A DNA stretch of 64,000 bases from NCBI RefSeq assembly GCF_035594765.1, contig NC_085847.1, positions 5,518,001 through 5,582,000 of the forward strand. The letters run 5' to 3'. Source of the stretch: Anolis carolinensis (lineage: Eukaryota). Under the pieces are notes generated by a model that made no database searches, was not told the DNA's origin, and worked only from the letters and a program-made list of their open reading frames with translations. Shown piece by piece: positions 27,001 through 30,000 of this stretch. The translations under genes and the position numbers were made by a program. The first letter of the stretch is position 1; each line of letters starts with the position of its first letter.

Positions 27001-30000
27001 TCAGGGAGCAGCGGCGTGTGTGCGTGCGAGGCAGGCGGCCCAGAAGGCGGCAAGGCGCCCGTCCCCGTTGGCGCAGAAGTGGGTGAAGTCCCGGAGGAGC
27101 CGGTCGGGGAAGCGCTCGTCGCCCGTGGCCGAGGAGCGCCAGGTCTTGGTCAGCATGGAGTTGTGGGCCCAGTGGAAGCCCACCCCCTGCCCCTCCCCGT
27201 TGGGCGCCGAGGGCGAAGGAGAGGGGGCCGAGTCCCGCCTCCGCCGCTGGGACGAGGAAGGGGCCGCCATGGCCGCCGGGGCGGGAGGAGGAAGCGGCTG
27301 CGACCCCGAAGAGCGGCGCTTGGAGTACGGCAGCTGCAGGAAGACCGTCCCTGCAGAGAAGAAGAAGAGAGACCACCACCACTGAACCATTCGCATGACC
27401 TCAAAACCCCGTTAAACGATATATCATGATATTGAGAGATTGAGAAATAATAGTAACACCGAGAGATAAATAAAAATAGAGAAATCAGATATTAAAGAAT
27501 GGTGGCGGCCATTGTGAGGGGTCCCGGGGAGGGGTGGGGGGCTGACCTGTGACGTGGATGTACTGGGGCTTGTTGTCGGAGGGGAAGTTGAAGGCGGAGG
27601 CCGAGTATTTGTCCCGGATGAAGCCAAACCGGTGGGCAATCACTTCCTGCAGAAGCTGCATCCGGTCCCAGTAGGTCTCCGGCTCAAATCCTGCACGGAC
27701 GGAGGGAGGGGGGGGCCGGACCCGGGGGGTTATTGTTATTACTATCATTATGATTCTCTCAGTATCATCCACATGTTTGTGTTGTTGTAACATCTACATG
27801 AAGCAGCTGGGTGAGGGCACCCAGGGTGTAGGAGAGCGGTGACACGTACATGCGGATGACACCCAAGCCTACTACTGTTTCAGTATGAGCCACAATGCGT
27901 CCCCTCTAGGCATTCCCGGGGTCCTCCGGCGCAACCCTGTGGCCGTCCTGGGCAGGAGGCCCCGCCCTTGATTCCCTCGAGCGCCCGCCGGCCGGCCGGC
28001 CGTACCGTCAAAGAGGTTCTCCTGGGAGCCTTCCTTGTGGAGGCAGTGGACGTGGAGCGGGATGAAGAGCTGGGCCCGGAGGGGGTCTCCGTACAGGAAG
28101 CTGGGCAGCGCAAAGGGCCCCTCGAGGACCGGGACCAGCAGGAAGCCGCAGGAAGTGGCCTTGCGGTGCCAGCCCTGGACCATCTCGAAGAGGACGGCGG
28201 CCGTGACGGCCATCCAGTGGAGCTTGACCTCGAAGGCGGTGCCGAGGGAGAAGTTGCCGTGGTAATAGCAGCTGCACCACTCCAGGCGCTGTGTCCGGTG
28301 GTTCACGTCCACCTCCAGGGTCACCGTCCGCTGCTCCGGGACCGTGGCCGCTGCCGGGGGAGAACGAGGAGGAAATGGGAGGGAACCAGGGAAAGGGCGA
28401 GCGGGAAGAGAGGGGAACCAGCGACCCCTCCCCTCCCCTCCCCTCCAGGGCCCGCCCCCCCGCCCCCCGACCCCTGTGACGCGGAGGTGGTGCCCCCTCC
28501 CCCCCGCCCCCTCCCCCGCTTACCGAGGATGGCGGCGGCCTGGCTGCGCCCGCCGAAGCTGCGGCTGAAGGAGCTGTGGCGGCTGGCGTAGGAGGCGGGG
28601 CGGCTGGGCAGCCAGGGCAGGAGGAAGGCCGGGACCTCGGAGCGCAGGCAGGGCTGCTCGTCGGCCACCACGGCCACCTCGAACCACTTGCGCTGGAAGG
28701 CCGAGGCGTCGTCCCGGGCGGCCGAGGGCCACAGCGAGGGGGGCGGAGGCAGCCCCGCTGGGAGGGGGGAAGGGCTAGGGTTAGGACCCCCTCGGGCGGC
28801 CGTTTGGGGGAGGGGGAGGGGGCCGGGGGGGGGGGGCTCACCGCGATGCTCCTGCTCCTTGTCCTCCGGGGCCTTGTAGAAGTAGAAGCCGTAGACGAAG
28901 GTGCGGAGGGTCTCCCCCGAGGCGTGCACGATCAGCTGCTCGTCCAGCATTTTCTGGAAGGAAACGGAGGACAGGGGACGGGGGACGGGGGGGTGAACAA
29001 CGGGGAGGGGCCGGAGGGGAAACAGGGTCCCGGTGGGGGTCGTCCTCCTGAGGACGTGGGGCCACGGGGGCAAGGGCCCCTAGAGAACCATTCTTGGGAA
29101 ACAGGGAGGAAGTAGCGCTGGGGAAGGGGGCAAGCGGGCCTGGTTCTCTGGCTCTTCCCGCTGCTCACCTGCATGATGTCCATGGCCATGGCCTGGGTCT
29201 GGACCCCTTCCACCGTGCTGACCAGCCAATGGACGGCCTCCGCGCTGATGAAGCAGGACGGGGAGAGGCCCTTCTGCTCGGTGAGGAGCGGGACGCCCGA
29301 CCTGCGTGCCGGGAAGAGGGGAGTGGGCACCCCGTCCGACGCCATGGCCAGGAGGCCACCCTCCCCCCGCCTCCCCCTCCCTTACGTCGGGTGCTTCATG
29401 GCCTCCAGGATCTCCGTCAAGCTGGACGACGAGGTCAAGGGGCCGGCGGTCGAGGTCTGGGCGCTGCAAGGAGAGCGGTCGGGGTGTTCAATACAGATGC
29501 CGAGGGTCCTTCTCATCCCGTCCCCCCGTCCCCTTACTCACCCGTTTTCTGTCCATCCAGGCATCTGGTCAACGCTTTGGGACCCCGTCAGCGACTGACC
29601 GCCGCTTCGTTCGGACTCCAAACTGACCACTGATTGGTCAATCGATACCTCGAGAGAGAGAGAGAGAGAGAGAGAGAGAAAGGTTAATCATTGCCTATAA
29701 TCATATTGTTTATTTTCAATTTTACTTTTAGTTTCGTTCCTTACTTTGCGTGGGCTGTCCACGTAATTTGGATTCATGGCCGCGCTGTTGCCATCGGAGG
29801 GCTGGGCGCTGGAGCTTTTGGTGGAAATGGGGGCCGACTGTTGTTCGTTCAGCGTCCTCAAAAAACAAAACAAAACAAATAATATATAATAATAATAATA
29901 ATAAAACTTTATTTATAACCCGCCACCATCTCCCCGATGGGGACTCGGGGCGGCTTACATGGGGCCATGCCCAGACACCATACAATATAACAAAATAAAA

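What the first reader, a model, noticed from the sequence alone, without database searches (positions are those of the whole stretch)
27547..28350. Two precise intron losses in the 3' end of DEPDC5
Seen: one uninterrupted 345-nt exon (28006-28350) and one 144-nt exon (27547-27690). Recalled: human DEPDC5 splits these into exons of 170+172 and 61+83 nt. The expected junctions fall exactly at 28180/28181 (FEM|VQG, 170 nt in) and 27629/27630 (HR|FG, 61 nt in) with no residual sequence, while upstream exon sizes match human. Inference: clean, 3'-biased intron loss, which is rare in amniotes and fits recombination with reverse-transcribed cDNA in a LINE-rich, highly recombining region.
Basis: partly seen in the sequence, partly recalled or inferred. 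Interest (0 to 1): 0.75.

Follow-up and report, generated by a model that had tools for sequence, protein, structure and literature searches.

The report
Two precise intron losses in lizard DEPDC5
In this lizard genome the growth-control gene DEPDC5 has cleanly lost two introns that fish, frog, bat, bird, snake and three other lizards all keep; this is a real but ordinary kind of event, and how the introns were removed is still open.

Summary
On the minus strand, exon 28350-28006 (345 nt) and exon 27690-27547 (144 nt) are single exons with AG/GT borders. An RNA contig from a public run splices exactly at those borders and runs through both exons unbroken. DNA contigs from three other studies carry the same sequence together with the flanking introns, so this is not an assembly collapse or cDNA contamination.

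In Podarcis, Pogona, Eublepharis and Hirundo the same coding sequence is split 170+172 and 61+83 nt. Ahaetulla, the frog Hymenochirus and the bat Eptesicus have the same four exons. A Notothenia contig shows the matching splice sites. Both introns are therefore ancestral and were lost after this lineage split from agamids. The other 38 introns are kept.

The whole gene is only 11.4 kb, with a median intron of 122 nt and GC3 of 0.84.

The mechanism is not settled:
- **Against a single cDNA conversion:** the intron between the two losses is retained.
- **For deletion by microhomology:** in Pogona the lost introns are the shortest and third-shortest of 40, and both end in G|GT direct repeats.
- **For a transcript template:** both losses lie near the 3' end.

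The two mechanisms fit about equally well. This is a new example of a known kind of event, of moderate interest. The scan also noted a possible intron loss in SF3A1 nearby; I did not check it.

The parts
28006..28350 (-). Fused exon A (345 nt), equal to ancestral exons of 170 + 172 nt. Encodes ..[14 protein letters not shown]|VQGWHRK..NLFD.
   Evidence: Splice sites read. Pfam DEPDC5_CTD 58-170. RNA contig X16 is continuous over 28005-28350 with joints on both sides. Orthologues split it.
28180..28181 (-). Site of lost intron 1 (phase 0, between ATG Met and GTC Val).
   Evidence: All 106 fragment ORFs from other species break at query residue 56/57. Intron lengths here: 110 nt Pogona, 141 Ahaetulla, 703 Podarcis, 3688 Eublepharis, 940 Hirundo, 117 Hymenochirus, 1819 Eptesicus.
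27547..27690 (-). Fused exon B (144 nt), equal to ancestral exons of 61 + 83 nt. Encodes [20 protein letters not shown]|[27 protein letters not shown].
   Evidence: Splice sites read. Pfam DEPDC5_CTD 172-218. RNA contig is continuous over 27546-27689. Orthologues split it.
27629..27630 (-). Site of lost intron 2 (phase 2, inside the Arg codon CG|G). The outgroups have AG|G here, so the codon later changed AGG to CGG.
   Evidence: Junction sequences. Intron lengths here: 174 nt Pogona, about 253 Ahaetulla, 610 Podarcis, 1238 Eublepharis, 1040 Hirundo, about 85 Hymenochirus, about 1802 Eptesicus.
27691..28005 (-). Retained intron (315 nt) between the two fused exons. It has an AT-rich middle part with a repeat at 27788-27816.
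   Evidence: GT..AG read. Skipped by RNA contig X16 and present in DNA contigs X3, X8 and X9. The homologous intron is 1141 nt in Pogona.
28351..28523 (-). Retained intron (173 nt) upstream of fused exon A.
   Evidence: RNA joint; sequence.
27351..27546 (-). Retained last intron (196 nt).
   Evidence: RNA joint 'skips 196'; sequence.
27004..27350 (-). Last coding exon (347 nt vs 293 in other lizards). It carries an 18-codon Pro/Ala/Ser-rich insertion; the stop codon is at 27003-27001.
27004..38439 (-). Whole DEPDC5 coding region: 39 coding exons and 38 introns (73-909 nt, median 122, total 6.66 kb).
   Evidence: tblastn of Podarcis and Numida proteins. Exon-by-exon mapping. Splice-site refinement.

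Best explanation
Shown: this is the single, expressed, syntenic DEPDC5 gene of an iguanian lizard. Earlier notes of this scan call the genome Anolis. Two introns that are ancestral to jawed vertebrates were removed exactly, base for base, after this lineage split from agamids (Pogona). They are the 4th-last and 2nd-last introns of the coding region. The other 38 introns are retained. Inferred, about 45% likely: these were two separate genomic deletions made during double-strand-break repair. The repair would have used the short direct repeats that the splice signals themselves create (ATG|GT...CAG|GT and CAG|GT...CAG|GT). It acted on introns that were already very short, in a gene under strong deletional shrinkage and GC-biased evolution. 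Only the exact deletions kept the reading frame and survived. A repair templated by the spliced transcript is a near-equal rival.
For: The loss and its direction: searches show both introns, same position and phase, in eight outgroup taxa. The window lacks them. Not an artefact: with a spliced RNA contig and three independent DNA contigs that keep the flanking introns. Nearest outgroup: Pogona has the highest summed per-exon identity (84.6%), and it shares with the window the absence of a 63-nt exon that snake, gecko, bird, frog and bat have. For deletion by microhomology: in Pogona the two introns are 110 and 174 nt, rank 1 and 3 by shortness among 40; in the snake they are 141 and about 253 nt. 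Both belong to the 8 of 40 introns whose downstream exon starts with GT, and they are the two shortest of that class (chance that two random introns both fall in the class is 0.036). Microhomology is 3 nt and 5 nt against a gene mean of 2.5. The whole gene has shrunk to 6.7 kb of intron, against 27.7 kb in Pogona and 46 kb in Podarcis, and 17 of 38 introns are 100 nt or less. Small size and junction microhomology are the two predictors reported for microhomology-mediated intron loss (PMC3698931). The intron between the two losses is retained, as expected for separate single-intron events.
Against: The sample is two events, and the size and microhomology tests were chosen after seeing the data. 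Three nucleotides of microhomology at intron 1 is only slightly above the gene mean. Other short introns of the GT class (83-218 nt in the window) are retained. Deletion by microhomology does not by itself predict that both losses sit in the last four introns (chance 0.008 if position were random); it explains this only because the shortest suitable introns happen to lie there. Intron lengths at the time of loss are inferred from living outgroups.
Confidence: 0.45

Rival explanations
1. Transcript-templated loss. Either a reverse-transcribed, 5'-truncated DEPDC5 cDNA recombined with the gene, or the spliced mRNA itself served as template for repair of breaks in these introns. Each event would erase an intron exactly.
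For: Both junctions are exact. Both losses lie in the last four of about 40 introns, the 3' bias expected from cDNAs primed at the poly(A) end (review PMC3488318). The gene is transcribed and spliced. RNA-templated break repair has been shown to delete whole introns precisely in human cells (PMC12065846). GC3 of 0.9-1.0 in the 3' exons suggests frequent recombination-associated breaks there.
Against: The intron between the two losses (315 nt) and the last intron (196 nt) are retained. One continuous conversion tract is therefore excluded, and two events or a patchy tract are needed. The model gives no reason for both introns to have GT-starting downstream exons. No reverse-transcriptase ORF was found in the window. 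Germline expression was not tested.
Confidence: 0.4
2. The 3' end of the gene was overwritten by gene conversion from a processed or semi-processed DEPDC5 retrocopy elsewhere in the genome.
For: It would give exact junctions and a 3' location. It is a special case of the transcript-templated model.
Against: No retrocopy was seen or searched for. The retained intron between the losses again requires a patchy tract. Only one locus was recovered in contigs from four runs.
Confidence: 0.05
3. Artefact: an assembly collapse, cDNA contamination of the assembly, or a mis-called exon structure.
For: None was found. The region is GC-rich and has a repeat at 28418-28475 that breaks some contigs.
Against: DNA contigs from three other studies (X3, X8, X9) carry the fused exons together with flanking introns. 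The RNA contig splices at exactly the predicted borders. 20 runs from 8 studies hold the stretch.
Confidence: 0.01
4. The introns were never present in this lineage and were gained in parallel elsewhere.
For: None.
Against: Position and phase are identical in fish, frog, mammal, bird, gecko, lacertid, snake and agamid, which would need many parallel gains at two sites. Intron gain is extremely rare in vertebrates (PMC3257199 abstract).
Confidence: 0.005

Closest known systems
Exact lineage-specific intron losses described in mammals (Roy, Fedorov & Gilbert 2003; Coulombe-Huntington & Majewski 2007; both cited from the reference list of PMC3488318, and from my own knowledge; the 2007 paper is not held in the library)
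   Same: Exact removal with the reading frame kept. The lost introns were short in the nearest outgroups. They lie in the 3' part of a broadly expressed housekeeping-type gene. All other introns are conserved.
   Different: This is a different clade (a squamate lizard) and a different gene. The two losses are not adjacent. The gene as a whole is unusually compacted (11.4 kb against 32-63 kb in the other reptiles and the bird measured here) and very GC-rich.
Microhomology-mediated intron loss (van Schendel & Tijsterman 2013, PMC3698931)
   Same: Short introns, and direct repeats spanning the 5' and 3' exon-intron junctions (G|GT and CAG|GT). Single introns were lost rather than runs.
   Different: That model was established statistically in Caenorhabditis and Drosophila, not in vertebrates. 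Here there are only two events, and one has just 3 nt of microhomology.
Reverse-transcriptase-mediated intron loss and RNA-templated double-strand-break repair (PMC3488318; PMC12065846)
   Same: Precise whole-intron deletions in a transcribed gene, with a 3' location.
   Different: The hallmark of consecutive adjacent losses is absent, because the intervening intron survives. No RT source or germline expression is shown here.

Membership tests
Lineage-specific precise intron loss | An intron is present at the homologous position and phase in outgroups on both sides of the tree. | tested here: met
   Exon sizes are 170, 172, 61 and 83 nt in Podarcis, Pogona, Eublepharis and Hirundo. The same four exons with GT..AG are found in Ahaetulla, Hymenochirus and Eptesicus, and the matching acceptor and donor in Notothenia.
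Lineage-specific precise intron loss | The focal genome has an uninterrupted in-frame exon-exon junction with no residual or missing bases. | tested here: met
   GAGATG|GTCCAG and CACCG|GTTTGG match the spliced outgroup sequence.
Lineage-specific precise intron loss | It is genomic DNA, not cDNA or an assembly artefact: neighbouring introns are retained and there is independent read support. | tested here: met
   38 other introns are retained. DNA contigs from three further studies span exons plus introns.
Lineage-specific precise intron loss | The locus is the functional orthologue: intact ORF, expressed and correctly spliced. | tested here: met
   No stop in any of the 37 exon blocks translated. 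A spliced 4021-nt RNA contig exists. A large ORF lies head-to-head upstream, as the Tantalus-domain gene does in Podarcis; the identity of that ORF was not confirmed.
Reverse-transcriptase-mediated intron loss | Several adjacent introns are removed together by one cDNA tract. | tested here: not met
   The intron between the two losses (27691-28005) and the last intron (27351-27546) are retained and spliced.
Reverse-transcriptase-mediated intron loss | The lost introns show a 3' positional bias. | tested here: met
   The lost introns are numbers 37 and 39 of 40 in Pogona numbering. There are only two events.
Reverse-transcriptase-mediated intron loss | Germline expression of the gene and an available reverse transcriptase. 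| not tested
   The tissue of RNA run X16 is unknown. No RT domain was found in 18 ORFs of the window, which says nothing about the rest of the genome.
Microhomology-mediated intron loss | Direct repeats at the two exon-intron junctions are above the gene's background. | tested here: inconclusive
   Microhomology is 3 nt and 5 nt against a mean of 2.5 in Pogona. Both introns are in the 8/40 class whose downstream exon starts with GT (P = 0.036). The test was chosen after seeing the data, and n = 2.
Microhomology-mediated intron loss | The lost introns were short. | tested here: met
   110 and 174 nt in Pogona (rank 1 and 3 of 40) and 141 and about 253 nt in Ahaetulla. Lengths at the time of loss are inferred.
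Processed retrocopy | All introns are absent, with a poly(A) tail and a new genomic location. | tested here: not met
   38 introns are retained at orthologous positions.

The most novel reading that the evidence does not exclude
The two DEPDC5 losses may be part of a regional or genome-wide burst of exact intron deletions in the GC-rich, strongly compacted and presumably highly recombining parts of this lizard's genome. If so, the burst would be driven by break repair in introns already shrunk to the minimum spliceable size. Such regions would be a natural amniote system for separating microhomology-mediated from transcript-templated intron loss.
Probability: 0.2. Interest if true: 0.6.

Novelty: new member of a known kind. 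Interest (0 to 1): 0.35.

Why it matters
Exact intron loss is uncommon in amniotes, and its mechanism is still debated: reverse-transcribed cDNA, microhomology end joining, or the RNA-templated break repair recently shown in human cells. This case is well documented, with eight outgroup taxa plus RNA and DNA read support. It is informative for three reasons. The two losses are close together but not adjacent. In the nearest outgroup they hit the two shortest introns whose junctions form G|GT repeats. And they lie in a gene whose introns have collapsed to about a quarter of their length in the nearest relative. As a single case it is a small addition to comparative gene-structure data. It has no obvious effect on DEPDC5 function, because the protein sequence across both junctions is unchanged. 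Its wider value depends on whether the same pattern recurs across the genome.

Tried and rejected
1. Finding relatives that share the fused exons. The word search with exon A and the full HMMER search returned only fragments that break at the junction, or spliced products. None was a genomic ORF spanning the junction. The apparent spanners P0001, P0021 and P0039 are read-through of a 141-nt intron or ORFs that start inside the intron. This says little, because the window's own ORFs are not in that collection either.

2. Naming the fragment contigs. The listing of cluster members gave no names. L001-L004 were judged avian only from their C-terminal sequence.

3. No pleurodont iguanian (other Anolis, Sceloporus) appeared in the best 120 rows of either named search.

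4. Numida and Acipenser proteins were not on record as gene products.

5. My greedy exon mapper derailed on weak exons and two scripts crashed on a pattern. These were redone with stricter settings.

6. A check for LINEs: Pfam on 18 long ORFs found no RT or endonuclease.

7. Coulombe-Huntington & Majewski 2007 is not held in the library.

8. Steps left out by rule. P0021 (139 aa, 362 contigs, 35-Mb NCBI contig) is probably human; I set it aside and did not fetch or compare its contigs. N runs were left as they are.

Full report
**What is in the window**

The finding lies on the minus strand. Reading 28500-27400 shows two exons with canonical borders.
- Exon A is 28350-28006, 345 nt: ...cccccggcag|CGGCC ... 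TTTGACG|gtacgg.
- Exon B is 27690-27547, 144 nt: gtccgtgcag|GATTTG ... GTCACAG|gtcagc.

Both translate without a stop and match Pfam DEPDC5_CTD (PF19418) at profile positions 58-170 and 172-218. The last exon covers positions 218-297.

tblastn with full-length lizard and bird DEPDC5 places the whole coding region at 38439-27004, only 11.4 kb.

**Do other species split these exons?**

A word search with exon A alone (114 aa, by reference) returned 106 short ORFs from unassembled public contigs. Every one stops or starts at query residue 56/57, that is FEM|VQG. The few that seemed to span the site either read through a 141-nt in-frame intron (P0001) or begin inside an intron at a CAG acceptor (P0021, P0039).

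P0021 occurs on 362 contigs, including a 35-Mb NCBI contig, and is probably human. I set it aside and fetched nothing for it.

Contigs L001-L004 are avian, judged from their C-terminal sequence. They have four exons where the window has two.

**Named outgroups**

The family was clear, but the claim is comparative and needs full-length orthologues with loci. I therefore ran the one large search with exon A. It gave a full-length frog protein (P0115). Two word searches followed, with P0115 and with Podarcis P0269, and these gave named orthologues.

I mapped public gene models exactly onto their own loci:
- Podarcis muralis, Pogona vitticeps, Eublepharis macularius and Hirundo rustica all end with exon sizes ...225, 170, 172, 61, 83, 293 (296 in Hirundo).
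- Ahaetulla prasina, the frog Hymenochirus boettgeri and the bat Eptesicus fuscus have the same four exons with GT..AG borders.
- The Notothenia contig has the acceptor cag|GTTCAA before VQG and the donor TACAG|gtggag after ..AILYR.

Human was not examined, by rule.

**The rest of the gene**

I mapped the 42 Podarcis exons one by one and refined the splice sites. The window has 39 coding exons.
- 29 of the 39 exon sizes equal those of Podarcis. The others differ by multiples of three in variable regions.
- Every Podarcis intron has a counterpart except 38|39 and 40|41.
- Podarcis exon 32 (63 nt) is missing from both the window and the Pogona locus, but is present in snake, gecko, bird, frog and bat.

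That shared exon loss, together with Pogona having the highest summed per-exon identity (84.6%), places the window's species in Iguania with agamids as the nearest available outgroup. Earlier notes of this scan call the genome Anolis. The run tool shows only a coded organism name.

Exons were handled separately throughout.

**Is it an artefact?**

No. Twenty runs from eight studies hold at least half of the words of 27300-28600. Four runs were laid on 27000-28700.
- X16 gives a 4021-nt RNA contig that skips 27351-27546, 27691-28005 and 28351-28523, all with GT..AG on the minus strand. It is continuous through both fused exons, with low-depth intronic pieces beside it.
- X3, X8 and X9, from three other studies, give DNA contigs that run through exons and introns alike.

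The fused exons are thus genomic, flanked by real introns, and used as single exons in mRNA.

**Anatomy of the losses**

Junction 1 is GAG ATG|GTC CAG (phase 0). Junction 2 is CAC CG|G TTT (phase 2). Both are identical in register to the spliced outgroup sequence. The outgroups have AG|G at junction 2. The window now has CGG, a synonymous A-to-C change at a base no longer held by a splice signal.

| Species | Intron 1 (nt) | Intron 2 (nt) |
|---|---|---|
| Pogona | 110 | 174 |
| Ahaetulla | 141 | about 253 |
| Podarcis | 703 | 610 |
| Eublepharis | 3688 | 1238 |
| Hirundo | 940 | 1040 |
| Hymenochirus | 117 | about 85 |
| Eptesicus | 1819 | about 1802 |

In Pogona these two introns rank 1 and 3 by shortness among 40. 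Both belong to the 8 of 40 introns whose downstream exon begins with GT, which gives the direct repeats G|GT (3 nt) and CAG|GT (5 nt). The gene mean is 2.5 nt. Within that class they are the two shortest.

The intron between them is 1141 nt in Pogona. It survives in the window at 315 nt.

**Context**

| Measure | Window | Pogona | Podarcis | Eublepharis |
|---|---|---|---|---|
| Total intron length | 6.66 kb | 27.7 kb | 46 kb | 58 kb |
| GC3 | 0.84 | 0.80 | 0.70 | 0.55 |

The window's introns have a median of 122 nt, and 17 of 38 are 100 nt or less. GC3 rises to 0.9-1.0 in the 3' exons. The protein is unusually diverged towards Ala, Pro, Gly and Arg, and the last exon has an 18-codon insertion.

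This fits GC-biased, deletion-prone evolution of the kind seen in highly recombining regions, but recombination itself was not measured. No reverse-transcriptase ORF was found among 18 long ORFs of the window.

**Mechanism**

The loss itself is shown. How it happened is inferred.

A single continuous cDNA conversion is excluded, because the middle intron and the last intron are retained. Two models then fit about equally.
- **Exact deletion by end joining** at the splice-signal microhomologies. This is favoured by intron shortness, by the GT class, and by the gene-wide deletional shrinkage. Small size and junction microhomology are the predictors reported in PMC3698931.
- **Transcript-templated repair or cDNA recombination.** This is favoured by the 3' clustering and by the demonstration that spliced RNA can template precise whole-intron deletion (PMC12065846; review PMC3488318).

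I put deletion by microhomology at about 0.45 and the transcript-templated model at about 0.40. With two events and tests chosen after seeing the data, this is a lean and not a result.

**Novelty**

I found no paper on intron loss in this gene or lineage. Public annotation of the species presumably already shows the exon count. This is a new, well-supported example of a known phenomenon.

I did not test it. If it is real, it would hint at a regional pattern.

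Noticed in passing
window 29649-29744 (intron between exons at 29856-29745 and 29648-29542); L006: The 63-nt exon that encodes DGTFF(M/V)E(F/Y)VRSPRTASAFHTQ (Podarcis exon 32) is absent from both the window and the Pogona locus. It is present in snake, gecko, bird, frog and bat. This looks like an exon loss shared by iguanians; only a 96-nt intron remains here.
   Followed up: partly
window 27004-38439: DEPDC5 is extremely compact: 11.4 kb with a median intron of 122 nt, and 17 of 38 introns are 100 nt or less. The same gene spans 32 kb in Pogona, 51 kb in Podarcis and 63 kb in the gecko. 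It is also very GC-rich, with GC3 of 0.84 overall and 0.9-1.0 in the 3' exons.
   Followed up: partly
window 27004-27350: The last exon is 54 nt longer than in other lizards. It has a Pro/Ala/Ser-rich insertion (..[20 protein letters not shown]..) and many changes towards GC-rich codons in an otherwise conserved C-terminal domain.
   Followed up: no
window 27788-27816 (inside the retained intron 27691-28005): Short high-depth 31-mers in run X3 (depth 110-135 against 27 for the surrounding contig) mark a repeated element in the AT-rich middle of this otherwise GC-rich intron. The last intron (27351-27546) has a similar AT-rich block.
   Followed up: no
window 28418-28475: A G-rich simple repeat (ggggagg units) in the intron upstream of exon A breaks contigs in several runs. 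X3's contig differs there by 9 gap positions.
   Followed up: no
window 39948-42581 (+): An 878-aa open reading frame with no Pfam match lies head-to-head with DEPDC5. By position it may be the large exon of the Tantalus-domain gene (PRR14L) that lies upstream of DEPDC5 in Podarcis. This was not confirmed.
   Followed up: no
window 2778-3737 (-): A 320-aa ORF matches the G-protein alpha subunit family (PF00503, E 5e-87, profile 2-231 of 333). It is probably the large first coding exon of a G-alpha gene.
   Followed up: no
L010 (Logan SRR22184594) and L007: The 141-nt intron at FEM|VQG is in frame and free of stops in P0001. It has the same length as in the snake Ahaetulla, so that contig is probably from a snake. 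This is an example of an intron short enough to be read through by ORF callers.
   Followed up: partly
   Followed up: no
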